NCBI GenBank assembly: GCA_964035545.1
Contig: OZ037766.1
Span: forward strand, 124,001-188,000
Origin: Bugula neritina
Lineage: Eukaryota; Animalia; Bryozoa
Reading direction: 5' to 3'
DNA: 64,000 bases
The notes below the pieces were generated by a model. That model ran no database searches and was not told the origin of the DNA. It worked only from the letters and a program-made list of their open reading frames with translations. The position numbers and the translations under genes were made by a program. The number at the start of each line of letters is the position of its first letter. Position 1 is the stretch's first letter. Positions 30 through 62,400 of the stretch are shown piece after piece.

Positions 30-1884
30 TGCTCTATCTAATAGAACTATATACCTGCTCTATCTAATAGAACTATATACCTGCTCTATCTAATAGAACT
101 ATATACCTGCTCTATCTAATAGAACTACATACCTACTCTATCTAATAGAACTATATACCTGCTCTATCTAATAGAACTACATACCTGCTCTATCTAATAG
201 AACTATATACCTGCTCTATCTAATATAACTATATACCTACTCTATCTAATAGAACTATATACCTTCTCCATCTAATAGAACTATATACCTGCTCTATATA
301 ATATAACTATATACCTACTCTATCTAATAGAACTATATACCTACTCTATCTAATATAACTATATACCTACTCTATCTAATAGAACTATATACCTACTCTA
401 TCTAATAGAACTATATACCTGCTCTATCTAATAGAACTACATACCTGCTCTATCTAATAGAACTATATACCTGCTCTATCTAATATAACTATATACCTAC
501 TCTATCTAATAGAACTATATACCTTCTCCATCTAATAGAACTATATACCTACTCTATCTAATAGAACTATATACCTACTCTATCTAATAGAACTATATAC
601 CTGCTCTATCTAATAGAACTATATACCTGCTCTATCTAATAGAACTATACACCTACTCTATCTAATAGAACTATATACCTGCTCTATCTAATAGAACTAT
701 ATACCTACTCTATCTAATAGAACTATATACCTGCTCTATCTAATAGAACTACATACCTGCTCTATCTAATAGAACTATATACCTGCTCTATCTAATATAA
801 CTATATACCTGCTCTATCTAATAGAACTATATACCTACTCTATCTAATAGAACTATATACCTACTCTATTTAATAGAACTATATACCTACTCTATTTAAT
901 AGAACTATATACCTGCTCTATATAATATAACTATATACCTACTCTATCTAATAGAACTATATACCTACTCTATCTAATAGAACTATATACCTGCTCTATC
1001 TAATAGAACTACATACCTGCTCTATCTAATAGAACTATATACCTGCTCTATCTAATATAACTATATACCTGCTCTATCTAATAGAACTATATACCTACTC
1101 TATCTAATAGAACTATATACCTACTCTATTTAATAGAACTATATACCTGCTCTATCTAATAGAACTATATACCTGCTCTATCTAATAGAACTATATACCT
1201 TCTCCATCTAATAGAACTATATACCTACTCTATTTAATAGAACTATATACCTGCTCTATATAATATAACTATATACCTACTCTATCTAATAGAACTATAT
1301 ACCTACTCTATCTAATAGAACTATATACCTGCTCTATCTAATAGAACTACATACCTGCTCTATCTAATAGAACTATATACCTGCTCTATCTAATATAACT
1401 ATATACCTACTCTATCTAATAGAACTATATACCTGCTCTATCTAATAGAACTATACACCTACTCTATCTAATAGAACTATATACCTACTCTATCTAATAG
1501 AACTATATACCTGCTCTATCTAATAGAACTATATACCTGCTCTATCTAATAGAACTACATACCTGCTCTATCTAATAGAACTACATACCTGCTCTATCTA
1601 ATAGAACTATATGCCTGCTCTATATAATATAACTATATACCTACTCTATCTAATAGAACTATATACCTACTCTATCTAATAGAACTATATACCTGCTCTA
1701 TCTAATAGAACTACATACCTGCTCTATCTAATAGAACTATATGCCTGCTCCATCTAATAGAACTACATACCTGCTCTATCTAATAGAACTACATACCTGC
1801 TCCATCTAATAGAACTACATACCTGCTCTATCTAATAGAACTACATACCTGCTCTATCTAATAGAACTACATACCTTCTCCATC
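30..1884 (-). repeat. 26-bp minisatellite (~70 copies) built from the MMP exon/intron donor junction
   Basis: Sense-strand unit GTAT(A/G)TAGTTCTATTAGATAGAG(C/T)AG; the true junction is GATGGAGAAG|GTATGTAGTTCTATTA at 1875/1874. Confidence 0.95.
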
Positions 1885-4800
1885 GAATCTAGCTTCGTCG
1901 TCGTGATTTTCCCCGACATTGAATGAAAACCTGATGTCGGCCTGCAGCAGGACAGTGATGTCATCAATGAGTTCCGTAAACGTGTAGTCGCTGCCTCCTT
2001 CCCAGAATTCCAGAGCCTTTCGCAGAACTTCATGAACTTTGTTTCTCGTCTCCTCTGATGCGAAGTGGTTCTCGTCATATCGGACAACTCTGAAATCAAG
2101 AAGAGTGACATGGGAAGGTAACTCTTAGTTTTCTGCACCTCAAGAATCTAATGGTTTGACAAGAAAACACAACTACAACTTATTAATAATGGTCATCTGT
2201 CATTTAGCGACACTTCAATGCTATACGGAACAAAGCTGAGACTAGTTATCTCTCCGTGTCATGTCGGAGTTGTCTCTCCGTGTCATGTCGGAGTTGTCTC
2301 TCCGTGTCGCATTGAAGTTGTTTCTCATGTTGAAGCCCTGAGACTCAAGGTTCACTCCATTCATTAAGGTTGTGATGTCATGACTCAGCAACACACCATA
2401 ATGAAAGAGGTAACCTCAAGTCACTTCTCACAGTCCCAAACTTAACAGACTCTTTTCTTTCTCCTTTTTAGAGTAAAATTGTTTGCAATACGGCAAACAT
2501 CAAGTTATAGGAATAAATATTCACTTAAATATCAAAGTTTTGAGGTACTTCATTAGTAATACATAATCCATAGTTCAGGTTTTACTGAACAGGGCAACAC
2601 GTTGCTATTCCTAAGTCATATTTAATCTCAAAGCATAGTATTTTAAGGTCTGCGAACTTACGACCAAGTTAGCTGGGTTTTGGGAAACCCGATGTGTTTA
2701 TTCTGAGCGCCAGATCTCAGTTGCTCTATATCATCAAACACTCCACAACGTGGTGCCACTAGCTTAGCCTCAGTTTCCTCATCAAGTACCCCCGTCTCTG
2801 GTAAACCTGCCAGGAACTGGACGCCCTTGACACTTTGAGAGACTTCCTGGTTGGTGGGAAGTCTTCCATACTCATTTAGAGAACTGGGGAGATATTCATA
2901 TTTCTGTAGCAACTTCTGCAACTATAAGAACAAAGTTGAGCTGAAAATACTTTAATAGTTTCGGTGAAAATACCCTTTGAATAAGTTGTTTACTATAGAA
3001 ATTGAATGTCAACACTAATAGCTAAAGGAGTAACCATGCATGTTTACTCTACACTGATTTGCTTTGATTTGTTACTTTTCTAATGCGAGACAACTCACAA
3101 AAAAGTCTATCAGCCAAATTAAACTTCAGGCTGAAAATCTGGAAGGTATAGACGCACTAAAGACTTGAATCCAACCTACTAAAGCATATTGTGATTAATT
3201 AATCATATAAATATTGCAGTGCATAGTCTACTTACCATCCCATACCTGTAAAATACTTGAGACAAACGAAATAAAATACAAAATATATCTTCTAAAATCT
3301 AAACTATTGCTTTCAGCTAAATGAGTAGTAGCTACTGCATAAATTAATCCATTACAGCCACTCCACTTTGTTGATTCACAAAATACAATACCTTGTTTCA
3401 GGTTGTTATCGCAAGCGCTAAATCTTAATTTTCTATATTTTACAACAGTTTACTAAGTTTACAGATTGCTGTTTAATGACTTACATATAATGGGAATAAT
3501 TTTAAAACTCTTAAAACCTTTCTCTACCTTATTCAAAACATTGTTACCTAAAATTTTCTATTACTTTCTCCTTTTTGAAACACTACCAGCAGACTACCAA
3601 CAGTGTGGAAGGTTCTAGAACACTACCAGCAGACTACCAACAGTGTGGAAGGTTCTAGAACACTACCAGCAGAATACCAACAGTGTGGACCTACCAGGTA
3701 TCAGCGAGGAACACGACTACGACTACTACAGCAGAAAGTCTAGTAACAAATGACTGGAAGTCGTGAGATTATCTCAACAAATGATGAGCTACAGAGTCAT
3801 TGACATTTCGGATGTGTTCACATAGCCCGGATCTACACTCTATAGAAGATTGCTGGAAGGGGGGGGGCAGATATCTATTTCAATCGATTTGGTCTATGCA
3901 GGATTTAACAGCTGAGAGAGATTATATAATAATAGATGATTACATAAGACATCATTATACAGAGATATATTTAGACTGGCATTTTCACATCAAATCTCTG
4001 GAATATTACTAGAAAGAGTTTATAGCATCATACCACGTACTTACAGTGTACCTACAGTGTTTTACAGTGTAGGCTACTTACAGTGTCTTGCAGTGTCTTA
4101 CTGTGTACTTACAGTGTACTTACAGTGTACTTACAGTGTCTTACAGTGTACTTACAGTGTCTTACTGTGTACTTACTGTGTACTTACAGTGTACTTACAG
4201 TGTCTTGCAGTGTACTTACAGTGTACTTACAGTGTCTTGCAGTGTCTTACTGTGTACTTACAGTGTACTTACAGTGTACTTACAGTGTCTTACTACGTAC
4301 TTACAAGAGGATCTAATACACTATTATATAAGTAACAATTACACCTAATAGTTGGCCAATTTAAAGAGTTTGGTCTCCAGTTTTTATATAGCTGCCGAAA
4401 CTGCTGCCAATGCAAAACTAGCAGATGATTTGAACAAACACAAGATTTGCAGGCAAGTCTCACTCTCACAGCTGCCTGACATCTTACATATTCTCAAGTG
4501 ATGATCCCACTGTTAGAGTTATAGCTCTAACTCTAACTCTAACAATAGTTATAGCTCTAACTCTAACTCTAACAATAGTTATAGCTCTAGTTCTAACAAT
4601 AGTTATAGTTCTAACAATAGTTGCTATTCATGATAAGGTAACCTACTATACTCCCATATATACTATACACTAAATCTATGTATGGACCAAAGGCTATACC
4701 TAAGAGTGGTGTGAATCTATGGCTAGGGTGTTACGTAATCACCGGTATATCATGTCATGACAATAACCTCATCAATAATAGGATCAAGTAGCTCTAAAAG

Positions 4801-5342
4801 TCAAAATGCTAGCAGATTCTTCAGAGAGGAGGGTTTTGACCTTCATTATAGAGATAGCAAACAATAGGCACTGTGTTACAGCTGGTAAACCAACTGGGAC
4901 AGTCAACTAAACTCAGCCAACTTCTACAGCTCTCTGTTTAACCTCCCTGAGCTCCCTTATACCACAGCTCTCTGTTTAACCTCCCTGAACTCTATACTAA
5001 GACAAAGGAGATCCCCACTTATGTGATGAACTCTCATATATAATGTGTTTCTAAGCTTATATGCCAAGGAATATTTCATTGATGTTTGGAAAGAGTTGCA
5101 TTGAGTGAAAACAGAACCACAAGCTCACCAGCAACCACAAATTCCCATAATGCAAGCCATGGAAAACATTGAAAAACACTTTTCTATCAAAAATAGTATG
5201 AAATAAAGACATTCGAACTCTTTAGAGGGAAGCTTGCTGCGTGTACACTCACCTCTGTGGTGTTGGTGGAGAGGAGGCTGGCAGAGATTGTCAGTGGGGA
5301 CACTACTCCAAATATCAAGATGAGAAGTCCTTTAATCCGCAT
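1875..5342 (-). CDS. Matrix metalloproteinase (M10A), 5' part; exons 5342-5253, 2921-2662, 2089-1875; continues past the left window edge
   Basis: Signal peptide MRIKGLLILIFGVVSPLTISAS; prodomain LQKYEYL...PRCGVFD (cysteine switch); catalytic N-half ALEFWEGGSDYTFTE...ADIRFSF...HDDEARFDGEG. All junctions are GT-AG with consistent phases (0,2,1). The zinc HExxH motif lies outside the window. Confidence 0.92.
3578..3689. repeat. 40-bp tandem repeat x~3 in MMP intron 1
   Basis: aacactaccagcagactaccaacagtgtggaaggttctag repeated. Confidence 0.85.
4037..4304. repeat. 10/11-bp tandem repeat (ttacagtgtac/ttacagtgtc) in MMP intron 1
   Basis: Directly visible; explains ORFs 4057-4348. Confidence 0.9.
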
Positions 5343-8665: not shown

Positions 8666-11600
8666 TAGTATATATAGACAGTAGTATATAGACAGTAGTA
8701 TATAGAGAGTAGTATATAGAGAGTAGTATATAGACAGTAGTATATAGAGAGTAGTATATAGAGAGTAGTATATAGAGAGTAGTATATAGAGAGTAGTATA
8801 TAGAGAGTAGTATATAGAGAGTAGTATATAGAGAGTAGTATATAGAGAGTAGTATATAGAGAGTAGTATATAGAGAGTAGTATATAGAGAGTAGTATATA
8901 GACAGTAGTATATAGAGAGTAGTATATAGAGAGTAGTATATAGAGAGTAGTATATATGAGATAGTATATAGAGAGTAGTATATAGACAGTAGTATATAGA
9001 GAGTAGTATATAGACAGTAGTATATAGACAGTAGTATACAGAGAGTAGTATATAGAGAGTAGTATATAGACAGTAGTATATAGAGAGTAGTATATAGACA
9101 GTAGTATATAGAGAGTAGTATATAGACAGTAGTATATAGAGAGTAGTATATAGAGAGTAGTATATAGAGAGTAGTATATAGAGAGTAGTATATAGAGAGT
9201 AGTATATATAGAGTAGTATATAGAGAGTAGTATATAGAGAGTAGTATATAGACAGTAGAATATAGAGAGTAGTATATAGAGAGTAGTATATAGAGAGTAG
9301 TATATAGAGAGTAGTATATAGAGAGTAGTATATAGACAGTAGTATACAGAGAGTAGTATATAGAGAGTAGTATATAGAGAGTAGTATATAGACAGTAGTA
9401 TATAGAGAGTAGTATATAGACAGTAGTATATAGAGAGTAGTATATAGAGAGTAGTATATAGAGAGTAGTATATAGAGAGTAGTATATAGACAGTAGTATA
9501 TAGACAGTAGTATATAGAGAGTAGTATATAGAGAGTAGTATATAGACAGTAGTATATAGAGAGTAGTATATAGACAGTAGTATATAGACAGTAGTACATA
9601 GAGAGTAGTATATAGAGAGTAGTATATAGACAGTAGTATATAGAGAGTAGTACATAGAGAGTAGTATATAGAGAGTAGTATATAGACAGTAGTATATAGA
9701 GAGTAGTATATAGACAGTAGTATATAGAGAGTAGTACATAGAGAGTAGTATATAGAGAGTAGTATATAGACAGTAGTATATAGAGAGTAGTATATAGACA
9801 GTAGTATATAGAGAGTAGTATATAGAGAGTAGTATATAGAGAGTAGTATATAGAGAGTAGTATATAGACAGTAGTATATAGAGAGTAGTATATAGAGAGT
9901 AGTATATAGACAGTAGTATATATAGAGAGTAGTATATAGAGAGTAGTATATAGAGAGTAGTACATAGACAGTAGTACATAGACAGTAGTATATAGAGAGT
10001 AGTATATAGAGAGTAGTATATAGACAGTAGTATATAGAGAGTAGTATATAGAGAGTAGTATATAGACAGTAGTATATAGAGAGTAGTATATAGACAGTAG
10101 TATATAGAGAGTAGTATATAGAGAGTAGTATATAGAGAGTAGTATATAGACAGTAGTACATAGAGAGTAGTATATAGAGAGTAGTATATAGACAGTAGTA
10201 TATAGACAGTAGTATATAGAGAGTAGTATATAGAGAGTAGTATATAGACAGTAGTATACAGAGAGTAGTATATAGACAGTAGTATACAGAGAGTAGTATA
10301 TAGAGAGTAGTATATAGAGAGTAGTATATAGACAGTAGTATATAGAGAGTAGTACATAGAGAGTAGTATATAGAGAGTAGTATATAGAGAGTAGTATATA
10401 GAGAGTAGTATATAGAGAGTAGTATATAGAGAGAGTAGTATATAGAGAGTAGTATATAGAGAGTAGTATATAGACAGTAGTATATAGACAGTAGTATATA
10501 GAGAGTAGTATATAGAGAGTAGTATATAGACAGTAGTATATAGAGAGTAGTATATAGACAGTAGTATATAGACAGTAGTACATAGAGAGTAGTATATAGA
10601 GAGTAGTATATAGACAGTAGTATATAGAGAGTAGTACATAGAGAGTAGTATATAGAGAGTAGTATATAGACAGTAGTATATAGAGAGTAGTATATAGACA
10701 GTAGTATATAGAGAGTAGTACATAGAGAGTAGTATATAGAGAGTAGTATATAGACAGTAGTGTATAGAGAGTAGTATATAGAGAGTAGTATATAGACAGT
10801 AGTATATAGAGAGTAGTATATAGAGAGTAGTATATAGACAGTAGTATATATAGAGAGTAGTATATAGAGAGTAGTATATAGAGAGTAGTACATAGACAGT
10901 AGTACATAGACAGTAGTATATAGAGAGTAGTATATAGAGAGTAGTATATAGACAGTAGTATATAGAGAGTAGTATATAGAGAGTAGTATATAGAGAGTAG
11001 TATATAGAGAGTAGTATATAGAGAGTAGTATATAGAGAGTAGTATATAGACAGTAGTACATAGAGAGTAGTATATAGAGAGTAGTATATAGACAGTAGTA
11101 TATAGAGAGTAGTACATAGAGAGTAGTATATAGAGAGTAGTATATAGACAGTAGTATATAGAGAGTAGTATATAGACAGTAGTATATAGAGAGTAGTACA
11201 TAGAGAGTAGTATATAGAGAGTAGTATATAGACAGTAGTATATAGAGAGTAGTATATAGAGAGTAGTATATAGACAGTAGTATATAGAGAGTAGTATATA
11301 GAGAGTAGTATATAGACAGTAGTATATATAGAGAGTAGTATATAGAGAGTAGTATATAGAGAGTAGTACATAGACAGTAGTACATAGACAGTAGTATATA
11401 GAGAGTAGTATATAGAGAGTAGTATATAGACAGTAGTATATAGAGAGTAGTATATAGAGAGTAGTATATAGAGAGTAGTATATAGAGAGTAGTATATAGA
11501 GAGTAGTATATAGAGAGTAGTATATAGAGAGTAGTATATAGAGAGTAGTATATAGAGAGTAGTATATAGAGAGTAGTATATAGAGAGTAGTATATAGAGA

Positions 11601-14600
11601 GTAGTATATAGAGAGTAGTATATAGACAGTAGTATATAGAGAGTAGTATATAGAGAGTAGTATATAGAGAGTAGTATACAGAGAGTAGTATACAGAGAGT
11701 AGTATATATAGAGTAGTATATAGAGAGTAGTATATAGAGACTAGTATATAGAGAGTAGTATATAGACAGTAGTATATAGACAGTAGTATATAGACAGTAG
11801 TATATAGAGAGTAGTATATAGAGAGTAGTATATAGAGAGTAGTATATAGAGAGTAGTATATAGACAGTAGTATATAGAGAGTAGTATATAGACAGTAGTA
11901 TATAGACAGTAGAATATATAGAGTAGTATATAGACAGTAGTATATAGACAGTAGTATATAGAGAGTAGTATATAGAGAGTAGAATATAGACAGTAGTATA
12001 TAGAGAGTAGTATATAGACAGTAGTATATAGAGAGTAGTATATAGAGAGTAGTATATAGAGAGTAGTATACAGAGAGTAGTATATAGAGAGTAGTATATA
12101 GAGAGTAGTATATAGACAGTAGTATATAGAGAGTAGTATATAGACAGTAGTATATAGAGAGTAGTATATAGACAGTAGTATATAGAGAGTAGTATATAGA
12201 GAGTAGTATATAGACAGTAGTATATATAGAGTAGTATATAGAGAGTAGTATATAGAGAGTAGTATATAGAGAGTAGTATATAGACAGTAGTATCTAGACA
12301 GTAGTATATAGAGAGTAGTATATAGAGAGTAGTATATAGACAGTAGTATATAGAGAGTAGTATATAGACAGTGGTATATAGACAGTAGTATATAGACAGT
12401 AGTATATAGACAGTAGTATATAGAGAGTAGTATATAGACAGTAGTATATAGAGAGTAGTATATAGAGAGTAGTATATAGAGAGTAGTATATAGAGAGTAG
12501 TATATAGAGAGTAGTATATAGACAGTAGTATATAGAGAGTAGTATATAGAGAGTAGTATATAGACAGTAGAATATAGAGAGTAGTATATAGACAGTAGTA
12601 TATAGACAGTAGTATATAGAGAGTAGTATATAGACAGTAGTATATAGAGAGTGGTATATAGAGAGTGGTATATAGAGAGTAGAATATAGAGAGTAGTATA
12701 TAGAGAGTGGTATATAGAGAGTGGTATATAGAGAGTAGAATATAGAGAGTAGTATATAGAGAGTAGTATATAGACAGTAGTATATAGGCAGTAGTATATA
12801 GAGAGTAGTATATAGACAGTAGTATATAGAGAGTAGTATATAGACAGTAGTATATAGAGAGTAGTATATAGAGAGTAGTATATAGACAGTAGTATATAGA
12901 CAGTAGTATATAGAGAGTAGTATATAGACAGTAGTATATAGAGAGTGGTATATAGAGAGTGGTATATAGAGAGTAGTATATAGAGAGTAGTATATAGACA
13001 GTAGTATATAGACAGTAGTATATAGAGAGTAGTATATAGACAGTAGTATATAGAGAGTAGTATATAGACAGTAGTATATAGAGAGTAGTATATAGAGAGT
13101 AGTATATAGACAGTAGTATATAGACAGTAGTATATAGAGAGTAGTATATAGACAGTAGTATATAGAGAGTGGTATATAGAGAGTGGTATATAGAGAGTAG
13201 AATATAGAGAGTAGTATATAGAGAGTGGTATATAGAGAGTGGTATATAGAGAGTAGAATATAGAGAGTAGTATATAGAGAGTAGTATATAGAGAGTAGTA
13301 TATAGACAGTGGTATATAGACAGTAGTATATAGACAGTAGTATATAGACAGTAGTATATAGACAGTAGTATATAGAGAGTAGTATATAGAGAGTAGTATA
13401 TAGAGAGTAGTATATAGAGAGTAGTATATAGAGAGTAGTATATAGAGAGTAGTATATAGACAGTAGTATATAGACAGTAGTATATAGAGAGTAGTATATA
13501 GAGAGTAGTATATAGACAGTAGAATATAGAGAGTAGTATATAGAGAGTAGTATATATAGAGTAGTATATAGAGAGTAGTATATAGAGAGTAGTATATAGA
13601 GAGTAGTATATAGAGAGTAGTATATAGAGAGTAGTATATAGACAGTAGTATATAGAGAGTAGTATATAGACAGTAGTATATAGAGAGTAGTATATAGACA
13701 GTAGTATATAGAGAGTAGTATATAGAGAGTAGTATATAGACAGTAGTATATATAGAGTAGTATATAGAGAGTAGTATATAGACAGTAGTATATAGACAGT
13801 AGTATATAGAGAGTAGTATATAGACAGTAGTATATAGAGAGTAGTATATAGACAGTAGTATATAGAGAGTAGTATATAGAGAGTAGTATATATAGAGTAG
13901 TATATAGAGAGTAGTATATAGAGAGTAGTATATAGAGAGTAGTATATAGACAGTAGTATATAGAGAGTAGTATATAGACAGTAGTATATAGAGAGTAGTA
14001 TATAGACAGTAGTATATAGAGAGTAGTATATAGAGAGTAGTATATAGACAGTAGTATATATAGAGTAGTATATAGAGAGTAGTATATAGACAGTAGTATA
14101 TAGACAGTAGTATATAGAGAGTAGTATATAGACAGTAGTATATAGAGAGTAGTATATAGACAGTAGTATATAGAGAGTAGTATATAGAGAGTAGTATATA
14201 GACAGTAGTATATAGACAGTAGTATATAGAGAGTAGTATATAGACAGTAGTATATAGAGAGTGGTATATAGAGAGTGGTATATAGAGAGTAGAATATAGA
14301 GAGTAGTATATAGAGAGTGGTATATAGAGAGTGGTATATAGAGAGTAGAATATAGAGAGTAGTATATAGAGAGTAGTATATAGAGAGTAGTATATAGACA
14401 GTGGTATATAGACAGTAGTATATAGACAGTAGTATATAGACAGTAGTATATAGACAGTAGTATATAGAGAGTAGTATATAGAGAGTAGTATATAGAGAGT
14501 AGTATATAGACAGTAGTATATAGAGAGTAGTATATAGAGAGTAGTATATATAGAGTAGTATATAGAGAGTAGTATATAGAGAGTAGTATATAGAGAGTAG

Positions 14601-28400: not shown

Positions 28401-30249
28401 CTTACTATAATAACTTACTATAATAACTTACTATGATAACTTACTATAATAACTTACTATAATAACTTACTATGATAACTTACTATAATAACTTACTATA
28501 ATAACTTACTATGATAACTTACTATAATAACTTACTATAATAACTTACTATGATAACTTACTATAATAACTTACTATAATAACTTACTATACTAACTTAC
28601 TATAATAACTTACTATAATAACTTACTATAATAACTTACATGGTGGAGGAAGGCGTGTAGCTCAGGGTGACTACTAGGATTGCCAGTCACCTCAAAAAGA
28701 GGCAAGAAAATGTTTTCTAGAAGCTCTCCAAAGTTATCCAGCTGTTTGTTAGCCTTGTAGATGTCACTGTAACAGAAGAGCTCAATGGTTGCTGAATATA
28801 TAGTTTACTTGTGAGCAAAACTTTGATTTATTCTAGAAATACGACTAGAATAGCCTCAAAAACTGGACCACTTACTATAGCCTGGGAATCTGCACCATCC
28901 ACACGACGTTGGGGGAGTGAACTTTGTGTCTGATTGCCCACTTGGCAAGGTCGTCCCACTCGTTGCGAGATCTACCGTAGATGGAGAGTCTGAACTCGGC
29001 ATTCTGGTACTTACTCTCTTCCAGATCACTCATCACTTCCTGTGTATACGTATGTAATATATATGACAGAGTGAGTAATATATATATGATATAGTGAGTA
29101 ATATATATGATATAGTGAGTAATATATTTGATATAGTGAGTAATATATATGATATAGTGAGTAATATATATATGATATAGTGAGTAATATATATGATATA
29201 GTGAGTAATATATTTGATATAGTGAGTAATATATTTGATATAGTGAGTAATATATATGATAGAGTGAGTAATATATATGATATAGTGAGTAATATACATG
29301 ATATAGTGAGTAATATATATGATAGAGTGAGTAATATATATGATATAGTGAGTAATATATATATGATATAGTGAGTAATATATATATGATATAGTGAGTA
29401 ATATATATGATATAGTGAGTAATATATATGATATAGTGAGTAATATATATGATAGAGTGAGTAATATATATGATATAGCGAGTAATATAAAAGATGACAC
29501 AGCGAGTAATATAAAAGATGACACACCTTCATCAACTCAGCAAAGTACCTGCCCTGCATGTCATTATTAGTCTTCATGAAAATGTCTCTTACGACAGAAG
29601 CACCAATAGGATTGTACTTGGAGTTGAACTTATCAAATCTGTGAAATGTGTTCTTCCCTCCCTAAAACAAAGAGTTATTCAACCAATAGGAAAATAATAT
29701 ACTTACACAGTGTACATACAGTATATATACTTACACAGTGTACGTACAGTATATATACTTGCACAGTGTACATACAGTATATATACTTACACAGTGTACG
29801 TACAGTATATATACTTACACAGTGTACGTACAGTATATACTTACACAGTGTACGTACAGTATATATACTTACACAGTGTATGTACAGCATATATACTTAC
29901 ACAGTGTACGTACAGTATATATACTTACACAGTGTAAATACAGTATATATACTTACACAGTGTACGTACAGTATATACTTACACAGTGTATGTACAGCAT
30001 ATATACTTACACAGTGTACGTACAGTATATATACTTACACAGTGTAAATACAGTATATATACTTACACAGTGTACGTACAGTATATATACTTACACAGTG
30101 TACGTATAGTATATACTTACACAGTGTACGTCCAGCACATCTACGGACAAGTCAAAGGCACCGACTCCAACACTCTTGAACACCTTACAAATATAATATA
30201 ATATACTATAATATAATATAATAATATAGTGCAATAATATTATTATAAA

Positions 30250-48200: not shown

Positions 48201-51200
48201 ACTCTATACTCTCTCACCTTATCATACTCTATACTCTCTCACCTTATCATACTGTATACTCTCTCACCTTATCATACTGTATACTCTCTCACCTTGTCAT
48301 ACTGTATACTCTCTCACCTTATCATACTGTATACTCTCTCACCTTATCATACTGTATACTCTCTCACCTTATCATACTGTATACTCTCTCACCTTATCAT
48401 ACTGTATACTCTCTCACCTTATCATACTGTATACTCTCTCACCTTATCATACTGTATACTCTCTCACCTTATCATACTGTATACTCTCTCACCTTATCAT
48501 ACTGTATACTCTCTCACCTTATCATACTCTATACTCTCTCACCTTATCATACTCTATACTCTCTCACCTTATCATACTCTATACTCTCTCACCTTATCAT
48601 ACTGTATACTCTCTCACCTTATCATACTGTATACTCTCTCACCTTATCATACTGTATACTCTCTCACCTTATCATACTCTATACTCTCTCACCTTATCAT
48701 ACTGTATACTCTCTCACCTTATCATACTCTATACTCTCTCACCTTATCATACTCTATACTCTCTCACCTTATCATACTCTATACTCTCTCACCTTATCAT
48801 ACTGTATACTCTCTCACCTTATCATACTGTATACTCTCTCACCTTATCATACTCTATACTCTCTCACCTTATCATACTCTATACTCTCTCACCTTATCAT
48901 ACTGTATACTCTCTCACCTTATCATACTGTATACTCTCTCACCTTATCATACTGTATACTCTCTCACCTTATCATACTGTATACTCTCTCACCTTATCAT
49001 ACTGTATACTCTCTCACCTTATCATACTGTATACTCTCTCACCTTGTCATACTGTATACTCTCTCACCTTGTCATATTCCTCGTCCTCGGGGTTGGACAC
49101 GTGTCTCGGGAACTTCTTTCTACTCGGAGAGAAAGGCGTTTTGTTGACGGAGGTGGTGGAAGAGCCGTTGTTCCAGTTAACTGTGCTGTTACTTCCTACC
49201 TCCTCTACAAGAGAATATTATATAATACAGCCACTGTTAGTGCGCATATTGTACCTGAATTACTTCTACAATACTCTACTTCACTGCAACACTAAACCCC
49301 TGATCTTGGAAAGATGCCAGCATCATTCCTGTGATACAAAATATCCTGCAAACAATTTATTTAAACCTTAAAAATTTATCAGAAAAGTATTCAAATAGTT
49401 TGGCAGCCCCTTGTACGCTGAAAAAATAACCAACAGTAATTAAATGCACATCCCTGCTGTTAGCAATAAGACAGCTGGGTGAGATTAGGCAGTTGTGGGA
49501 GAGAGTGAGCAGGAAATGAAACTACCACACTGCATGCTTCCAGGAGAGTAGAGGCAGTGCAATGACAGTGCAGGCAGCGTCAGGGCAGTGCAGGCAGCGT
49601 CAGGGGAGTGTAGACAGTGTCAGGGCAGTGCAGGCAGCGTCAGGGCAGTGGTAAATTAGCAACACAACTTAAACAATGTTTAAATAAATGTGAGTTGTAT
49701 CTTTTCTCTGACTCATATAAAACTGTTTGCCTTACATTTCATTCCATTATGTTACAGACATCTATTACTAGTAATATCTATTTTTAGTAACATATATTCT
49801 TCGAAATTAGCAACATCTGTTATTAGTAAAAAAACAATTGAAAGCTAGCAGTGAGAGTTACTGTTAGTCAGTAGTGACAAAGTGAGAGTTACTGTTAGTC
49901 AGTAGTGACAGAGTGAGAGTTACTGTTAGTCAGTAGTGACAGAGTGAGAGTTACTGTTAGTCAGTAGTGACAGAGTGAGAGTTACTGTTAGTCAGTAGTG
50001 ACAGAGTGAGAGTTACTGTTAGTCAGTAGTGACAGAGTGAGAGTTACTGTTAGTCAGTAGTGACAGAGTGAGAGTTACTGTTAGTCAGTAGTGACAGAGT
50101 GAGAGTTACTGTTAGTCAGTAGTGACAGAGTGAGAGTTACTGTTAGTCAGTAGTGACAGAGTGAGAGTTACTGTTAGTCAGTAGTGACAGAGTGAGAGTT
50201 ACTGTTAGTCAGTAGTGACAGAGTGAGAGTTACTGTTAGTCAGTAGTGACAGAGTGAGAGTTACTGTTAGTCAGTAGTGACAGAGTGAGAGTTACTGTTA
50301 GTCAGTAGTGACAGAGTGAGAGTTACTGTTAGTCAGTAGTGACAGAGTGAGAGTTACTGTTAGTCAGTAGTGACAAAGTGGGAGTTACTGTTAGTCAGTA
50401 GTGACAGAGTGGGAGTATTGTTCTCAGTCAACAAGAGGAGATAATTACTAAATCTGATTACTTGTTTCACAACAAAATAGAATGTAATATGTTAACAGCA
50501 AGCAAGTGGTTCAGGGTCAAAGTTCATAGATAGAAGGGGAGAAAACCCCAACATATCCTGACACTCACCAAAAAACATGTCAATTAAAGCCATTAGAAAC
50601 AGAAATGCGACAATACTTGAAGACGGGTGAGTGTGTGACTGTATAGTAACACACTTTGACTGCAATAAGCTAGAGTCAGTGAACATAACATAACTCTACA
50701 CTGTGTACAGGAAGTATATAAACTCTACACTGTGTACAGGAAGTATATAAACTCTACACTGTGTACAGGAAGTATATAAACTCTACACTGTGTACAGGAA
50801 GTATATAAACTCTACACTGTGTGCAGGAAGTATATAAACTCTACACTGTGTACAGGAAGTATATAAACTCTACACTGTGTACAGGAAGTATATAAACTCT
50901 ACACTGTGTGCAGGAAGTATATAAACTCTACACTGTCTACAGGAAGTATATAAACTCTACACTGTGTACAGGAAGTATATAAACTCTACACTGTGTACAG
51001 GAAGTATATAAACTCTACACTGTGTGCAGGAAGTATATAAACTCTACACTGTCTACAGGAAGTATATAAACTCTACACTGTGTGCAGGAAGTATATAAAC
51101 TCTACACTGTCTACAGGAAGTATATAAACTCTACACTGTGTGCAGGAAGTATATAAACTCTACACTGTGTACAGGAAGTATATAAACTCTACACTGTGTG

Positions 51201-51524
51201 CAGGAAGTATATAAACTCTACACTGTGTGCAGGAAGTATATAAACTCTACACTGTCTACAGGAAGTATATAAACTCTACACTGTGTACAGGAAGTATATA
51301 AACTCTACACTGTGTACAGGAAGTATATAAACTCTACACTGTGTGCAGGAAGTATATAAACTCCACACTGTGTACAGGAAGTATATAAACTCTACACTGT
51401 GTACAGGAAGTATATAAACTCTACACTGTGTACAGGAAGTGATGTAAGCTGAGCGAACTCTCTAACCTGCAGGTGACTTTGAGCTGTTACTTATATCCGA
51501 TAGTCTAATCTTCTTAGAGCTCAT
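25452..51524 (-). CDS. AMPD: AMP deaminase (AMPD2-like), ~810-853 aa; exons 51524-51467, 49204-49068, 41872-41703, [40384-40295], 39829-39676, 39584-39374, [37360-37322], 35464-35245, 34900-34771, 33899-33762, 30183-30121, 29661-29527, 29039-28876, 28766-28640, 27029-26866, 26682-26277, 25607-25452
   Basis: Hallmarks [91 protein letters not shown]. All junctions are GT-AG and the frame is continuous (2562 nt with the bracketed symmetric exons). The two N-terminal exons and bracketed exons are less certain. Confidence 0.96.
25611..26276. repeat. Compound 15-bp + 22-bp minisatellite filling the last AMPD intron from donor to acceptor
   Basis: (acacagtatagtaat)n then (acagagtatagtagagtataat)n; on the sense strand the 22-mer starts with the donor GTATTA. 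Confidence 0.93.
27031..28273. repeat. 20-bp minisatellite (tacagtacttactattacta)n abutting an AMPD acceptor
   Basis: Directly visible; the sense strand contains GTAAGT in most units. Confidence 0.95.
28311..28639 (-). repeat. 13-bp minisatellite of the AMPD donor (GTAAGTTATTATA)n, ~25 copies
   Basis: Starts exactly at intron base 1 (CAT|GTAAGTT, 28640/28639). Confidence 0.93.
29052..29524. repeat. 21-24-bp minisatellite (atatatgatatagtgagtaat)n filling an AMPD intron
   Basis: Begins at the donor (GTGTCATCTTTTATATTACTCGCT x2) and runs to the acceptor. Confidence 0.92.
29697..30131 (-). repeat. 26/28-bp minisatellite (~16 copies) of an AMPD exon/intron junction
   Basis: Sense unit ATACTGTACGTACACTGT|GTAAGTATAT matches exon end GACGTACACTGT|GTAAGT at 30121/30120. 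Confidence 0.95.
30347..31174. repeat. 22-bp minisatellite (tattactacagctatacagata)n
   Basis: Directly visible; lies just upstream of the nested GPCR. Confidence 0.94.
31424..32920 (+). CDS. Orphan rhodopsin-like (class A) GPCR, 322 aa, nested antisense in AMPD intron 30184-33761; exons 31424-31592 and 32121-32920
   Basis: TM1 SGNFFV, TM2 NLMLCD, ECL1 WRFG + C3.25, SVERY, TM6 [10 protein letters not shown]7 NPLVY; phase-1 intron CAG|GTGAG...TCACAG|; 969 nt open. Confidence 0.93.
31664..31792. repeat. 14-bp repeat (gtgagtgacggact)n in the GPCR intron
   Basis: About 9 copies. Confidence 0.88.
33503..33745. repeat. 8-bp repeat (gagtga(c/g)a)n
   Basis: Starts 16 nt from the AMPD donor at 33761. 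Confidence 0.88.
33900..34750. repeat. 12-bp minisatellite (tgtaatatact(g/c))n, ~70 copies, whose last unit forms the AMPD acceptor
   Basis: Sense CAGTATATTACAG|GTTGAC at 33900/33899. Confidence 0.95.
34973..35233. repeat. 16-bp minisatellite (gctagacacgctgtca)n
   Basis: About 16 copies next to the donor at 35244. Confidence 0.93.
35477..36735. repeat. 20-bp minisatellite (tatactgtagtatagtgtaa)n next to an AMPD acceptor
   Basis: Directly visible, ~63 copies. Confidence 0.95.
37381..37735. repeat. 22-bp minisatellite (gttacctgcgctattacacata)n, ~16 copies
   Basis: The AMPD-sense strand carries GCAG|GTAAC in each unit. Confidence 0.93.
37746..38693 (-). mobile_element. 5'-truncated LINE (CR1/L2-group) 3' end: ORF2 C-terminus, 3' UTR and (AAAC)n tail
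   Basis: [36 protein letters not shown] and LWNELP are typical post-YADD motifs; tail AAAATAAAAACAAACAAACAAAC at 37768-37746. Confidence 0.9.
39074..39340. repeat. 15-bp minisatellite (ctacttccacccctg)n
   Basis: About 18 copies near the donor at 39373. Confidence 0.92.
39819..40128 (-). repeat. 25-bp minisatellite (~12 copies) of an AMPD intron/exon acceptor junction; each unit also matches an RFX X-box
   Basis: Sense unit TTACTTGTTTACAG|TGTTGCTATGG; the true acceptor is at 39830/39829; the + strand reads GTAACCATAGCAAC. Confidence 0.94.
40867..41676. repeat. 24-bp minisatellite (tacagtaatatacattatataata)n
   Basis: Directly visible; ends near the donor at 41702. Confidence 0.94.
41893..42092. 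repeat. 27-bp repeat (actgaag(a/g)tgaaatgtgcagaatatac)n x7
   Basis: Next to the acceptor at 41873. Confidence 0.9.
42259..42500. repeat. ~45-bp pyrimidine-rich repeat x5
   Basis: actctattctaccccctagctttaccttatcttactcctaacct repeated. Confidence 0.88.
42693..43520. repeat. 16-bp minisatellite (acagtactacagtgt(c/a))n
   Basis: About 51 copies. Confidence 0.94.
43990..49076 (-). repeat. 5.1-kb satellite, ~200 copies of a 25-bp unit containing the AMPD 5' splice site
   Basis: Sense unit A(C/G)AGTATGA(T/C)AAG|GTGAGAGAGTAT; the true junction is GAATATGACAAG|GTGAGAGAG at 49068/49067. Confidence 0.97.
49850..50416. repeat. 31-bp minisatellite (agagtgagagttactgttagtcagtagtgac)n, ~18 nearly identical copies
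   Basis: Directly visible. Confidence 0.95.
50692..51440. repeat. 29-bp minisatellite (aactctacactgtgtacaggaagtatata)n, ~26 copies
   Basis: Ends ~26 nt from the donor at 51466. Confidence 0.95.
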
Positions 51525-52017
51525 TGCGATACCATAAACCTGCAAAGTATATATTACATGACTACACTGCCACATATGCTACACTCTACAGGAACCCAAC
51601 AATTATGCAATAATATCATACATGAGTGTTAAGTGAGAGATAAATATCATCTTCAAAGTATTTCGATAAGCATAACACTCTCACTCACCGATAAGTGAGA
51701 TGCAATTCTCATATGAAAATTTAATTACTTATTACTAGAATAGAAATTACTAACTAAGAGCAAACATTAATTGAGTGCATACATCAATTTCACTAGACCC
51801 AAATCCTGAAAGTCATTGCAAACCGTTATAACAACAATAACTACAATGAGTAGTAGTATACTATATTTATCCTGATACTCATAGTATATTGATGGTGACT
51901 TTACCCTGGTCCTACGTTATCATTCACATTTAGCATCTTTATCTCAAATACATATCTAGTAAATACTCAAATAGGTTTCACTTTAAAATTGAACCGCAAG
52001 GCTTAAACTTAAAGTTA

Positions 52018-56492: not shown

Positions 56493-59400
56493 ATGGACGC
56501 TACACAGAGACCTATTCAGATAAATCCTGAGTTTGCCAATTATGCGCAAGAGCATGGCATTTTTGACATGTACAAGGTTAGTGAGCATTGTTGTAATAAT
56601 TGCACAAAGCCAGCCCACATTCAAAGTGACACTCTTGTAAAACTATAGTTATTACTAGTGACTGTGAGTACTCAGAACTGATTGAGTGATGATCACACAC
56701 GATAAATATAGTCACAATAGTAATATAACATAAAATAGAATTAGATGTTTGTAAATTAGTGTCACCATATGCAATATAAATAATCAAATCTAGTATTTAC
56801 AAGTAGAGTAGTAGTGGTGCCAAAACTCAAAATTAATTGTGTTTAGACTAAATAATAAAATTAAGTACTAATAAAAATATAATAATTATCATAATAATTA
56901 CATGATTGCTAAAATTGCTAATTAAATTTTGTGATATAATCATAGTTCTATGGGCTATAATTTTTCTTCAGTATAATTGTCATCTGTTTTAGTTTTTCAG
57001 CGTAAAAATTAACGGAGCACTTTAAGTGTGAAACACCATACACAACGGTCAACCATAATTCTTAAATTTAAATTATTCAAAATTAGTTCAACTATCACTC
57101 AGAATAAATAAGTGCACTAGTTGATACTTAATTTTAAATGTGAAAACAACTGCTCTAAAAATAAGTCTCAAAGTAGGACTAAAAGTATTTTAAATCATTT
57201 CAATTTATGTATTGTTTACTTATCAATCAAAAATCAGCACACTACAAGAGCTGGTAATATTAGAATGTACTTATCAAATGCTAGTTGGCCTAAAGGTAAC
57301 CGAGTTGTATATGAGTTGTATACCTTGACGTCTTCTCTAGAGATTGATGTCAAAGCTGTTGACAGAGATGCCTGAAGATCCTTTAACCTACTTGTATGAA
57401 AAGCTGAAACAAGAAGATGATGATTGTGAGTCACCATTTATCATAATGACTATTTGTTTCTCTTCATATGTTAGAGTCAGTGATAATCAGTCATATGACA
57501 CATAAAATAATTCAAAGCAATAACAGGAAGTAACTCAAAATAATATGAACTAACAGAAACCAATTTGCATTGTTACTAGTTATTACAGTGTCTAGAATGC
57601 ATTGACTTCAAACTGTCCTTATGTACAATTGCATTTTAGTGCCACAAATTGTTGTTCTTGGGCCACCAGTATCTGGCAAATGGTGTGTATCTAACAAAAT
57701 CAGTGCAACTGTGCGGGCACCTCATCTATCCCCTGAAGTGATATTGGTTGATGCCCCCAAGGAACTCCAGCTAGAGGTTGATAGATATGTGAAGGAGAGA
57801 GAGGTAAACTCCCCCTCACTGTAACCAAGACAGTTTGTACTAGTCAAATGTCACTACTTGTATAGCTACAATATATATACATGAAGATACATTATATACG
57901 TGAAGTATACAATATGTACATGAAATATACAATATATTAAATATATATACATGAACTATACAATATATATACATGAAGTATACAATATATATATAAATGA
58001 GCACTTTATATTGCTTTCAGCTTATTCCAGATGAGTTATGGGTTCGTCTTATACAAGAGAGACTTAACAGGTGGGTGAGCTGTCTGTCTGTGTGTCTCTA
58101 CATATGTCTGCCTGTGTGTCTGTTTCATTGAGTACAAACTAGAGAATGACACCATACATAGCAACTAATCATCAGGTAACTTTCAGATATGACTGCAAAA
58201 GGAGAGGCTGGGTAATGGACGGCTTTCCCGAGACACCAGACCAGGCTAAGGCACTGCAAGCTGTTGGCATAATGCCAAAACACGTCATCATCTTGGACGT
58301 CCCTGACACTCTGCTGCTGGAACGCTCTGAGGGGAAGAGAATTGACCCAGAAACCAACGGTAAGGTTGGATGAGTCATTGTATCCTATATGCTTGATAGT
58401 CCGTTATTATTCATAGACTTCTGATGGCAGATGTTGTGTATATTATCTGTTTTAGATACGTTGAATAGGCAAATGATTTACTAAATGCATTTCATATATT
58501 TTGAAATATATTTAAAAAAGGATTGATAAAATTAATTTATTAAAACATTTTGAATACGGATTTTTTGACAAGAGTTGTTACTTGAGTTTGACCGAAAAAC
58601 AGTAAAAATTGTTAATAAGATATAAATTCAATATAATTTAGTAAACTATTTTGCTCTTCATAAATTCTTTAAGACCGCTGAATATTAAATTAACATTGCA
58701 ATCGATTATGATGAGAGTATCAGTGTGTGTGGTCTACATAGTATCAGTGTGTATATGTGTGTCTACACAGTATCAGTGTGTGGTCTACATAGTATCAGTG
58801 TGTGTGGTCTACACAGTATCAGTGTGTGTGGTCTACATAGTATCAGTGTGTGTGGTCTACATAGTATCAGTGTGTGTGGTCTACATAGTATCAGTGTGGT
58901 CTGCATAGTATCAGTGTGTGTGTCTACATAGTATCAGTGTGTGTGTCTACACAGTATCAGTGTGTCTACACAGTATCAGTGTGTGTGGTCTACACAGTAT
59001 CAGTGTGTCTACACAGTATCAGTGTCAGTGTGTCTACACAGTGTCAGTGTGTGTGGTCTACATAGTATCAGTGTGTGTGGTCTACACAGTATCAGTGTGT
59101 GTGGTCTACATAGTATCAGTGTGTGGTCTACATAGTATCAGTGTGAATATGTGTGTCTACACAGTATCAGTGTGTGTGGTCTACATAGTATCAGTATGTG
59201 TGGTCTACATAGTATCAGTGTGTGTGGTCTACAGAGTATTAGTGTGTGTGGTCTACACAGTATCAGTGTGTGTGTCTACATAGTATCAGTGTGTGTGGTC
59301 TACACAGTATCAGTGTGTGCGGTCTACAGAGTATCAGTGTGTGTGGTCTACATAGTATCAGTGTGTGGTCTACATAGTATCAGTGTGAATATGTGTGTCT

Positions 59401-62400
59401 ACACAGTATCAGTGTGTGTGGTCTACATAGTATCAGTATGTGTGGTCTACATAGTATCAGTGTGTGTGGTCTACAGAGTATTAGTGTGCGTGGTCTACAC
59501 AGTATCAGTGTGTGTGGTCTACATAGTATCAGTGTGTGTGGTCTACAGAGTATTAGTGTGTGTGGTCTACACAGTATCAGTGTGTGTGGTCTACATAGTA
59601 TCAGTGTGTGTGGTCTACATAGTATCAGTGTGTGTGGTCTACACAGTATCAGTGTGTGTGTCTACACAGTATCAGTATGTGTGGTCTACATAGTATCAGT
59701 GTGTGGTCTACAGAGTATTAGTGTGTGTGGTCTACACAGTATCAGTGTGTGTGGTCTACATAGTATCAGTGTGTGTGGTCTACATAGTATCAGTGTGTGT
59801 GGTCTACACAGTATCAGTGTGTGTGGTCTACATAGTATCAGTATGTGTGGTCTACATAGTATCAGTGTGTGGTCTACAGAGTATTAGTGTGTCTACACAG
59901 TATCAGTGTGTGTGGTCTACACAGTATCAGTGTGTCTACACAGTATCAGTGTGTGTGGTCTACATAGTATCAGTATGTGTGGTCTACATAGTATCAGTGT
60001 GTGGTCTACAGAGTATTAGTGTGTCTACACAGTATCAGTGTGTGTGGTCTACACAGTATCAGTGTGTCTACACAGTATCAGTGTGTGTGTCTACATAGTA
60101 TCAGTGTGTCTACACAGTATCAGTGTGTCTACACAGTATCAGTGTGTGTGGTCTACATAGTATCAGTATGTGTGTCTACAGAGTATCAGTGTGTGGTCTA
60201 CACAGTATCAGTGTGGTCTACACAGTATCAGTGTGTGTGTCTACACAGTATCAGTGTGTGTGGTCTACATAGTATCAGTGTCAGTGTGTCTACATAGTAT
60301 CAGTGTCAGTGTGTCTACACAGTATCAGTGTGTCTACATAGTATCAGTGTGTGTGTCTGCATAGTATCAGTGTCAGTGTGTGTGGTCTACATAGTATCAG
60401 TGTGTATGTGAGTCTGTAATGTTGCAGAAGTGTGGCACAAGATCTTTGACTACCCGACGGATGCATCTGTACAGGAACGTCTGGTGGAGCCCCCAAACTA
60501 TTCCCAAGAGGTGATAGTTGAGCGGCTAGTAAACTACCACAGATACATTGGGGACATCACGCAGGCTTACCACTCAGTCTACAAGACTGTGAATGGAGAT
60601 CAACCCAAGATTGATGTCTTCTCTCAAGGTACCCAATTAGTATACCACCTGGTATGAATAAATAGCACCTGGTATGAATAAATAGCAACTGGTAGAAGGT
60701 GTATGGAGCATGGTAACATTTCATCTTTAATTTACTTTGAATGAAGTTATATATCAGAGTCTACTCTGAAAATTTTCAATTTTTCAAGCTTATTTCAGCT
60801 CTAGTTGGTCATCTGCTTACAACTGAATGTCAATCCATTTTGAAATTGACAACATAGCTGTACACACGTGAATACGCGCTACTAATAAGGTTATCAGTCT
60901 ATCATGTCCTTATTTCTGAGTCTAACAGAATGACTCATGAATCCTAATAATAATATGTTATGTGTCAGGAGATTGTTTAGTTATTAGTAATAACTTGCAT
61001 TATAGTAGACTGAAAAATGAGAGAAGACAACTTCTCATCACTTTCTAAAATTACTTATTAATCATTTACTAAGTTCATATTAGTCCAGGCTCACTATATA
61101 TCAAAGGTTTAATATATACTAACTTACTTATTTATATCTAAATACAACAGAGTAATATATTACTAGTATAATATATATAAATACTGTGTGTTACTCTTCC
61201 ACTATATATACCATGCTATCTCTTCCCAGCTATTGTTTCACTCCGCTGCGTCTAATGCCTTTCCTTTTCACCACGACTCAGATGGGCGGGGTTTTGTCTA
61301 GGTTCGGCCTACTATTCTGCAACACTAAGAGTCCCAGATACTAATCATCAGCTTCCCTATTGGGCCAACCTACTCATCAGCTCCTCTATTGGGCCAACCT
61401 ACTCACCAGCTTCCCTATTGGGCCAACTATTGTAGTAGTAGTCAGATGTTACCTTAACAGAGTAAATGTGTCATCTCGGAGTAACTCCCTAACTATTTGT
61501 TGCTTGTATTTGCTGCCTGTGTCTGTAGTGAATGCCTACGTGAGTCAAGATGCCAGATCTCACGCCCCGAATACACCGCGGGTTCTGCTCCTCGGACCAA
61601 CTGGAGCTGGCAAAGCGGTGCAAGCAGCTCTCATTGCTTCAAAGTATAACATCATTAATAGTAAGTATTACTCTCTCCCCTTCACAAGAGTATAACATCA
61701 TTAATAGTAAGTATTATTCCCTTCACTTCACAAGAGTATAACATCATTAATAGTAAGTATTATTCCCTCCCCTTCACAAGAGTATAACATTATTAATAGT
61801 AAGTATTATTCCCTCCACTTCACAAGAGTATAACGTCATTAATAGTAAGTATTATTCCCTCCACTTCACAAGAGTATAACATCATTAATAGTAAGTATTA
61901 TTCCCTTCACTTCACAAGAGTATAACATTATTAATAGTAAGTATTATTCCCTCCCCTTCACAAGAGTATAACATTATTAATAGTAAGTATTATTCCCTCC
62001 ACTTCACAAGAGTATAACGTCATTAATAGTAAGTATTATTCCCTTCACTTCACAAGAGTATAACATCATTAATAGTAAGTATTATTCCCTTCACTTCACA
62101 AGAGTATAACATTATTAATAGTAAGTATTATTCCCTCCCCTTCGCAAGAGTATAACATTATTAATAGTAAGTATTACTCCCTCCCCTTCACAAGAGTACC
62201 TTAAATTTTGAATATAAAGTTATTCAACTGATTTCGAAGTAGTTGAGATTCTATTTTAGAAATTTTAACATCAAACCTCTTATTTAGATGTATATTGTAA
62301 TATTATGTTAAACATAATAACTATATTGTTGTAGTCTCAGTCCCTCAACTTGTTCAGCAGGCCATTGAAAGTCAGTCTAAGTTGGGATTGGCTATAAAGC

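What the first reader, a model, noticed from the sequence alone, without database searches (positions are those of the whole stretch)
30..62198. Window-wide pattern: intronic minisatellites that are tandem amplifications of the gene's own splice junctions
Seen: in four unrelated genes the repeat unit spans the real exon/intron boundary and the array extends into the intron only. Donor cases: MMP 1875 (26 bp x~70), mucin-like 18086 (32 bp x3), AMPD 30121 (28 bp x~16), AMPD 49068 (25 bp x~200), AK8 61660 (46 bp x12). Acceptor cases: AMPD 39829 (25 bp x~12) and AMPD 26682 (x2). Other arrays start at intron base 1 or end in the AG (28639, 26276, 29524, 33900). Copy number ranges from 2 to ~200, like stages of one process. 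Established: tandem duplication of AGGT-containing sequence is a proposed intron-gain route, and AG|GT sites underlie recursive splicing. Inference: a junction-seeded expansion process (slippage or repair at sites of co-transcriptional splicing or R-loops) operates here, and the spliceosome must pick one site among tens to hundreds of near-identical decoys. I know of no description of this at such scale.
Basis: partly seen in the sequence, partly recalled or inferred. Interest (0 to 1): 0.92.

Follow-up and report, generated by a model that had tools for sequence, protein, structure and literature searches.

The report
Minisatellites that copy splice junctions
Near the chromosome ends of this animal (probably a bryozoan), most introns are swollen by private tandem repeats; some repeats happen to copy a splice site 2 to 200 times, yet RNA at the one site tested shows only the copy next to the exon is used, which matches the known 'mirage' repeats of amphioxus and humans rather than a new process aimed at splice sites.

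Summary
Observation confirmed: five donor-spanning and two acceptor-spanning arrays lie at the stated junctions of MMP, a mucin-like gene, AMPD and AK8; MMP, AMPD and AK8 models read open. The array tested is not an assembly artefact (about 10x depth in a DNA run; also in a diverged individual). RNA contigs from three studies splice only at the exon-adjacent acceptor 39829. Junction targeting is not supported. Over 296 introns (window, flanks, seven dynein genes), 136 arrays gave 15 donor-spanning against 14.0 expected by uniform placement in collapsed introns (P=0.43) and 5 acceptor-spanning against 14.0 (P=0.002). Better predictors are chromosome position (38/50 introns with arrays 0.7 Mb from an end; 5/42 in an interior paralog with the same 40/40 intron positions) and sequence (purine-pyrimidine alternating, no A-tracts). 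A 2-3x excess within 50 nt of exons remains, with no peak on the junction. No intron gain. The kind is described: amphioxus 'mirages', human F7, CBS, 6-16, LMNB2, PDGFA. Density and copy number (204 decoy donors) exceed the cases I read. This scan has reported the pattern several times on other DNA of this genome.

The parts
29..1888 (-). 26-bp x71.5 array spanning the MMP donor at 1875 (14 exon nt + 12 intron nt per unit; 68 of 70 decoys keep GT)
   Evidence: exon 2089-1875 is Peptidase_M10; next exon begins 4 bases before the window start
1875..5342 (-). MMP exons in the window: 5342-5253 (signal peptide), 2921-2662 (pro-domain), 2089-1875 (catalytic start)
18082..18180 (+). 32-bp x3.1 array over the mucin-like donor 18086 (5 exon nt); both decoys score higher than the first copy, which alone keeps the frame
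   Evidence: frame; gene not homology-supported
25611..26276 (-). last AMPD intron, filled by two arrays (22 bp x21 from the donor, 15 bp x15 to within 3 nt of the acceptor)
26668..26750 (-). degenerate 2-copy 41-bp duplication of the AMPD acceptor at 26682
28311..28639 (-). 13-bp x25 array starting at intron base 1 (unit begins with the donor hexamer, no exon bases)
29470..29525 (-). 24-bp x2.3 duplication starting at intron base 2
29697..30135 (-). 28-bp x15.9 array spanning the AMPD donor at 30121 (11-15 exon nt)
   Evidence: neighbouring exons match AMP_deaminase positions 186-227 and 251-294, leaving room only for the 21-codon exon that ends at the first copy
33901..34754 (-). 12-bp x71 array ending in the acceptor AG at 33900; each unit holds a CAG
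39819..40129 (-). 25-bp x12.5 array spanning the AMPD acceptor at 39829 (11 exon nt); 10 identical upstream decoys plus a variant; no stop codon in any frame
   Evidence: RNA joint 40295 to 39829 in three studies, no other joint
43990..49076 (-). 25-bp x204.9 array spanning the AMPD donor at 49068 (9 exon nt); 204 intact decoy donors over 5.1 kb
25457..51527 (-). AMP deaminase gene, 18 modelled coding exons, 864 aa open frame
61643..62198 (+). 46-bp x12.1 array spanning the AK8 donor at 61660 (18 exon nt); 11 intact decoys
56493..62424 (+). AK8-like adenylate kinase exons in the window (gene continues past the window; 487 aa)
8667..17087 (.). 14-bp x601 array outside any modelled intron: the largest array is not at a junction

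Best explanation
Passive by-product of a strong, sequence-biased minisatellite factory near chromosome ends, filtered by splicing. (1) Shown: array load follows chromosome position, not gene identity. (2) Inferred: short local duplications of 10-50 bp arise, preferentially in purine-pyrimidine-alternating, A-tract-free DNA, and grow by slippage and unequal exchange where recombination is high; unique intron DNA there also shrinks to about 50-120 nt. (3) Shown: in introns that small, a 25-bp unit crosses a junction about one time in five by geometry alone. (4) Shown for one acceptor, inferred from frame and homology elsewhere: the exon-adjacent copy is used, so the extra copies fall in the intron. 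Donor duplications are tolerated (first-donor rule, as in human F7) and survive at the chance rate; acceptor duplications are about threefold depleted, most likely because an upstream AG often wins and shifts the frame, so selection removes them.
For: Uniform null: donors 15 vs 14.0 (P=0.43), acceptors 5 vs 14.0 (P=0.002); same at TRF score 40; independent subtelomeric set 9 vs 6.7-10. Introns with arrays: 38/50 at 0.7 Mb from an end, 11/34 and 8/28 at 2.5 and 6.6 Mb, 0-5 per 18-43 in the interior; GC3 0.60 vs 0.47-0.54. Paralogous dyneins share 40/40 intron positions but differ in array load. Units: GTATA 8.6x, no AAAA/AATT/TTAA, RY alternation 0.64 vs 0.52; copy number rises with RY alternation (rho 0.33, P=5e-4) and the exon side of duplicated junctions is itself more alternating (0.57 vs 0.46, P=0.008, one of three tests). 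RNA joint at the outer acceptor. Recombination-linked subtelomeric satellites are described in frogs (PMC10794172); first-donor selection in F7 (PMC1557585).
Against: Arrays are 2-3x enriched within 50 nt of exons even after adjusting for composition (OR 2.3, P=0.003). If ancestral introns were 150 nt or more when seeded, the donor count becomes marginally high (15 vs 9.4, P=0.04). The sample is about 0.3 Mb with 20 spanning arrays; recombination rate was not measured; unit composition may partly have evolved after expansion; contigs drop rare splice forms; only one junction was tested with RNA.
Confidence: 0.72

Rival explanations
1. Exon-proximal, splicing- or transcription-coupled seeding: breaks, R-loops or crossovers concentrate at exon edges, so arrays start more often at or near junctions, and selection hides part of the excess.
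For: 27 of 61 arrays in collapsed introns of 200 nt or more lie within 50 nt of a junction vs 14.3 expected (P=1e-4; independent set 17 vs 9.1, P=0.002). Donor-spanning OR 2.0-2.4 relative to deep intron. 10.9 arrays per collapsed kb in small introns vs 2.8 in large ones.
Against: No peak at the junction: donor-spanning OR is at or below the OR for the adjacent intron (2.3-3.3). Low-copy (<4) arrays show no exon-proximal excess (OR about 1.5, P about 0.3), which points to age, retention or later deletion of flanks. Exon-proximal intron DNA is itself more unit-like. Many arrays, including the largest (x601), lie outside modelled introns.
Confidence: 0.17
2. The arrays are functional: recursive-splicing ladders, alternative donors or microexons that tune expression.
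For: Decoys are mostly intact and as strong as the real site; several units contain AG followed by GT; human 6-16 and CBS use the next one or two pseudo-sites (PMC1557585).
Against: Only the outer joint is seen in three RNA studies although the 39829 array is stop-free and every third copy would keep the frame. All five window donor units shift the frame. Decoy GT/AG are not significantly more conserved than other unit positions (P=0.13 and 1.0). Units of 20-46 nt are shorter than the repeat-free introns seen here. Units are private to each intron.
Confidence: 0.06
3. Intron gain in progress by tandem duplication of AGGT-containing exon sequence (Rogers model).
For: Some introns consist almost wholly of the array (dynein introns with 17-43 nt left after collapse); one interior dynein acceptor is built from exon-derived sequence.
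Against: In 15/15 donor-spanning arrays the intron start matches the next exon by at most 2 nt. 9/9 testable spanning introns, including the array-only ones, are shared in position and phase with a paralog.
Confidence: 0.03
4. Assembly artefact.
For: Arrays up to 8.4 kb; exact lengths of the long arrays were not checked against raw long reads.
Against: About 10x depth on the 39819 array in a DNA run and diverged copies in another individual; copies differ from each other by 2-15%.
Confidence: 0.02

Closest known systems
'Mirage' minisatellites of amphioxus (Adh3, globins BflGb6 and BflGb9; PMC3087553, citing Canestro et al. 2002)
   Same: [quoted passage not shown]
   Different: Here another phylum (probably a bryozoan); 12 of 50 introns in one subtelomeric gene; copy number to 205; tied to chromosome ends; shown here to occur at or below chance frequency. 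Length or somatic instability was not tested here.
Human junction-spanning VNTRs: F7 IVS7 (37 bp x5-9), 6-16/IFI6 intron 2 (25 pseudo-sites), CBS IVS13 (x15-20), LMNB2 (100 bp x10-15), PDGFA intron 4 (81 bp x16-18) (PMC1557585)
   Same: First unit spans the donor; identical or stronger pseudo-donors follow; the most upstream donor is used (oriented scanning).
   Different: Rare single loci in long-intron genes, all donors. Here many loci, tiny ancestral introns, acceptor cases too, and up to eight times more decoys than the largest case listed there.
Recombination-associated subtelomeric satellites (Xenopus, PMC10794172; human subtelomeric minisatellites, own knowledge)
   Same: Tandem arrays and GC rise toward chromosome ends; local sequence is amplified only there.
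   Different: Units here are RY-alternating and TA-rich rather than TGGG/AGGG-rich, and come from intron or exon sequence; recombination rate was not measured here.
Intron gain by tandem duplication (Rogers model) and recursive splicing
   Same: Tandem copies holding AG and GT.
   Different: Introns are old and units are not purely exonic; no evidence of stepwise removal.

Membership tests
mirage / junction-spanning minisatellite | tandem unit spans a real exon-intron boundary | tested here: met
   boundary 39829 confirmed by RNA, others by frame and Pfam
mirage / junction-spanning minisatellite | locus-specific unit, minisatellite size | tested here: met
   spanning units 20-46 bp (two of 66 and 90); no shared unit family beyond short low-complexity motifs among 75 units
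mirage / junction-spanning minisatellite | copies retain splice signals | tested here: met
   e.g. 204/204, 68/70, 11/11, 14/15 intact GT
mirage / junction-spanning minisatellite | normal splicing at the exon-adjacent copy | tested here: met
   one acceptor by RNA contigs from three studies; donors inferred from frame only; rare forms invisible
mirage / junction-spanning minisatellite | length polymorphism or somatic instability | tested here: inconclusive
   array present and diverged in another individual, but contigs collapse repeats
intron gain by tandem duplication | unit equals exon1 end plus exon2 start | tested here: not met
   0-2 nt match in 15/15
intron gain by tandem duplication | intron position is new | tested here: not met
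   9/9 spanning dynein introns shared with paralog; window genes not tested
recursive splicing | zero-length exons used stepwise (lariats, saw-tooth nascent RNA) | not testable with these tools
   only assembled contigs available
   15 vs 14.0 donors, 5 vs 14.0 acceptors
recombination-driven subtelomeric minisatellites | density rises toward chromosome ends | tested here: met
   8 regions sampled
recombination-driven subtelomeric minisatellites | tracks measured crossover rate | not testable with these tools
   only GC3 as a proxy

The most novel reading that the evidence does not exclude
Exon edges are true germ-line hotspots for short tandem duplication in this genome (crossovers or transcription-linked breaks focused within about 50 nt of exons), giving the measured 2-3x exon-proximal excess, with the junction-spanning share masked by selection; and an unrecognised positional rule lets the spliceosome pick the exon-adjacent copy among up to 204 identical donors or 11 acceptors in introns that were once only about 100 nt long.
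Probability: 0.15. Interest if true: 0.65.

Novelty: new member of a known kind. Interest (0 to 1): 0.33.

Why it matters
It extends 'mirage' repeats to another phylum at high density and tests, as far as I could find for the first time in print terms, whether they need a junction-directed mechanism: they do not. The donor/acceptor asymmetry (15 vs 5) measures how tolerant each site is to duplication. The arrays are a ready natural library for splice-site choice, where sequence is identical and only position differs, including acceptors, which the F7 work did not cover. The paralogous dynein pair with identical intron positions isolates the effect of chromosome position on intron evolution. 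Practically, such arrays can mislead gene prediction and read mapping.

Tried and rejected
Homolog search with an AMPD exon found no same-species or sister-species protein, so orthologous introns were not compared. Canestro 2002 is not held; mirage features are taken from PMC3087553. Hairpin strength of units is not above dinucleotide shuffles (z 0.02, P=0.39), so a fold-back mechanism beyond composition is not supported. Selective decay of decoy GT/AG: not seen. Unit length as a multiple of 3: no preference. Larger copy number at junctions: not seen. Shared dispersed unit family: not seen. One search compared non-overlapping AMPD parts and is uninformative. Spliced models were built only inside scripts; database searches were made exon by exon by reference and the joined search was left out.
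Full report
Setting. The window is G000:C2:124001-188000, 124 kb from the start of a 33.6-Mb contig in a 216-Mb animal assembly. Genome size, a 2016 'symbiont metagenome' RNA run and earlier notes of this scan suggest the bryozoan Bugula neritina; I did not test the name. 61% of the window is tandem repeat.

Gene models. I modelled MMP (minus), a mucin-like gene (plus), AMP deaminase (minus), a GPCR nested in an AMPD intron (plus) and an AK8-like kinase (plus), extended by 10 kb on each side. All 45 introns are GT-AG; MMP, AMPD and AK8 read open for 510, 864 and 487 codons. Exon-by-exon searches confirm Peptidase_M10, AMP_deaminase, ADK and 7tm_1 and about 80% identity to AMP deaminases. The mucin-like gene rests on frame and splice signals only. 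Joined models were kept inside scripts and not sent to search tools.

The observation. Every named case is there. Donor-spanning: 1875 (26 bp x71.5, 14 exon nt), 18086 (32 x3.1, 5 nt, weak), 30121 (28 x15.9, 11-15 nt), 49068 (25 x204.9, 9 nt), 61660 (46 x12.1, 18 nt). Acceptor-spanning: 39829 (25 x12.5, 11 nt) and a degenerate 2-copy duplication at 26682. The four flush arrays are also as described. Decoys are nearly all intact and often score as high as the real site: 203 of 204 at 49068, 11 of 11 at 61660; at 18086 both decoys score higher than the only frame-keeping copy.

Real DNA, and which copy is used. On 38900-40450, DNA run X12 shows depth 942 on the acceptor array against 89-96 on unique DNA, matching about 10-12 copies. 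Run X2, from an individual about 5% diverged in the intron, holds contigs on both ends of the array. RNA contigs from three studies all join 40295 to 39829, the exon-adjacent acceptor, and show no other joint, although the array has no stop in any frame and every third copy would keep the frame. Contigs drop rare forms, so minor use is not excluded. For donors the first copy is inferred: all five window units shift the frame, and at 30121 the neighbouring exons match profile positions 186-227 and 251-294, which fits the 21-codon exon ending at copy one.

Independent sample. I fetched seven dynein heavy-chain loci, took reference proteins, and defined 251 introns with a spliced aligner that ignores repeats. 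The gene 0.7 Mb from the end of C3 repeats the pattern: 38 of 50 introns carry arrays, 9 donor-spanning and 3 acceptor-spanning by the lenient count. So the pattern is regional, not peculiar to the window.

Each array was collapsed to one unit and placed uniformly, junction-crossing positions allowed. Over 136 arrays: 15 donor-spanning vs 14.0 expected (P=0.43); 5 acceptor-spanning vs 14.0 (P=0.002); unchanged at a lower TRF score. Window alone: 5 vs 2.6-3.7 (P 0.1-0.3). With a floor on ancestral intron length of 115 nt, the median of repeat-free subtelomeric introns, donors are 15 vs 10.9 (P=0.12); only at 150 nt does it become marginal (P=0.04). Junction overlap is what small introns and 25-bp units give, and acceptor duplications are under-represented.

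What does predict arrays. Position: introns with arrays fall from 38/50 (0.7 Mb from an end) to 11/34 and 8/28 (2.5 and 6.6 Mb) to 0-5 per gene in the interior, while GC3 falls from 0.60 to 0.47-0.54. The subtelomeric dynein and an interior paralog share 40 of 40 intron positions and phases, yet the paralog has arrays in 5 of 42 introns and longer unique introns (median about 265 nt vs about 118 for repeat-free subtelomeric ones). Sequence: units are rich in GTATA, TACTA and ACAGT (5-9x) and lack AAAA, AATT and TTAA; spanning and non-spanning units look alike; copy number rises with purine-pyrimidine alternation, and the coding side of duplicated junctions is more alternating than that of other junctions (P=0.008, one of three tests).

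Residual signal. In larger introns arrays lie within 50 nt of an exon about twice as often as expected (27 vs 14.3, P=1e-4; 17 vs 9.1 outside the window). In a conditional model the odds are 3.3 (2.3 after composition) for the 50-nt zone, 2.4 (2.0) for donor-spanning and 0.8 (0.7) for acceptor-spanning, relative to deep intron. The junction is thus no hotter than its neighbourhood. Arrays of fewer than four copies show no such excess, which favours age, retention or later deletion of flanking DNA over targeted initiation, but power is low.

Not intron gain. Units are exon end plus intron start; the match to the next exon is 0-2 nt in 15 of 15, and 9 of 9 testable spanning introns are ancestral. 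Some old introns have been almost entirely replaced by their array.

Mechanism. Shown: regional enrichment, compositional bias, chance-level donor overlap, acceptor deficit, outer-copy splicing at one site. Inferred: short local duplication, growth by slippage and unequal exchange where recombination is high (as proposed for frog subtelomeres, PMC10794172), tolerance of donor copies through first-donor selection (PMC1557585) and selective loss of most acceptor duplications.

Known kind. Tandem repeats spanning either boundary, with normal splicing, are the 'mirages' of amphioxus (PMC3087553); human F7, 6-16, CBS, LMNB2 and PDGFA are donor examples. Paper searches found no genome-scale treatment and nothing on bryozoan minisatellites; the library lacks most subscription papers. 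Earlier notes of this scan report the same pattern on several other pieces of this genome; they gave me the word 'mirage', and my statistics were computed independently.

Verdict. Real; new member of a known kind, unusual in density and copy number, and explained without a junction-directed process. Limits: about 0.3 Mb sampled, 20 spanning arrays, one RNA-tested junction, no orthologous introns, no recombination map. Interest 0.33.

Noticed in passing
window 39014-38982 and 37360-37322 (minus): Two small AMPD cassette exons (33 and 39 nt): one RNA run joins 39374 to 39014, two others go from 39374 straight to the exon at 35464, so they are alternatively spliced.
   Followed up: partly
window 31483-32920 (plus): Two-exon rhodopsin-family GPCR nested on the opposite strand inside an AMPD intron.
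   Followed up: partly
window 51934-53373 (plus): 480-codon open frame with a reverse transcriptase domain, a LINE-like element just upstream of the first modelled AMPD coding exon.
   Followed up: partly
window 54071-56335: About 430-bp inverted arms (54071-54498, 55894-56335) around a 1.4-kb TA-rich array: a foldback or MITE-like element between AMPD and AK8.
   Followed up: no
L025 9512-9672 (minus; MMP exon upstream of the window): The MMP zinc motif reads HQIGH instead of HExxH, suggesting a catalytically inactive matrix metalloproteinase (read from the sequence; model).
   Followed up: no
L021/L022 junction, dynein at C3:6.6 Mb (joined position 9978-10115): Acceptor-spanning 34-bp unit of 33 exon nt plus 1 intron nt: the predicted acceptor and its pyrimidine tract are now made of duplicated exon sequence, a splice-site turnover.
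   Followed up: partly
L001, L002 (contigs C193, C125; also C41, C165): Intron-free dynein domains with in-frame TAA/TAG only, typical of the ciliate genetic code: probably ciliate contigs in the assembly.
   Followed up: no
G000 C1, C3-C7: About 20 dynein heavy-chain loci in the host chromosomes, more than the usual animal set as I recall it; one close paralog pair shares 40/40 introns.
   Followed up: partly
window 61643-62198: Each AK8 unit has an AG 18 nt before the decoy GT, i.e. an in-frame pseudo-microexon separated by 28-nt spacers, probably too short to splice.
   Followed up: no
window 18883-20072 (plus): Coding tandem repeats (60 bp x13, 30 bp x7) in the Thr-rich exon of the mucin-like gene; both units are multiples of three, as expected for exonic arrays.
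   Followed up: no
window 8667-17087: 14-bp x601 array (8.4 kb) between divergently transcribed MMP and mucin-like genes.
   Followed up: no
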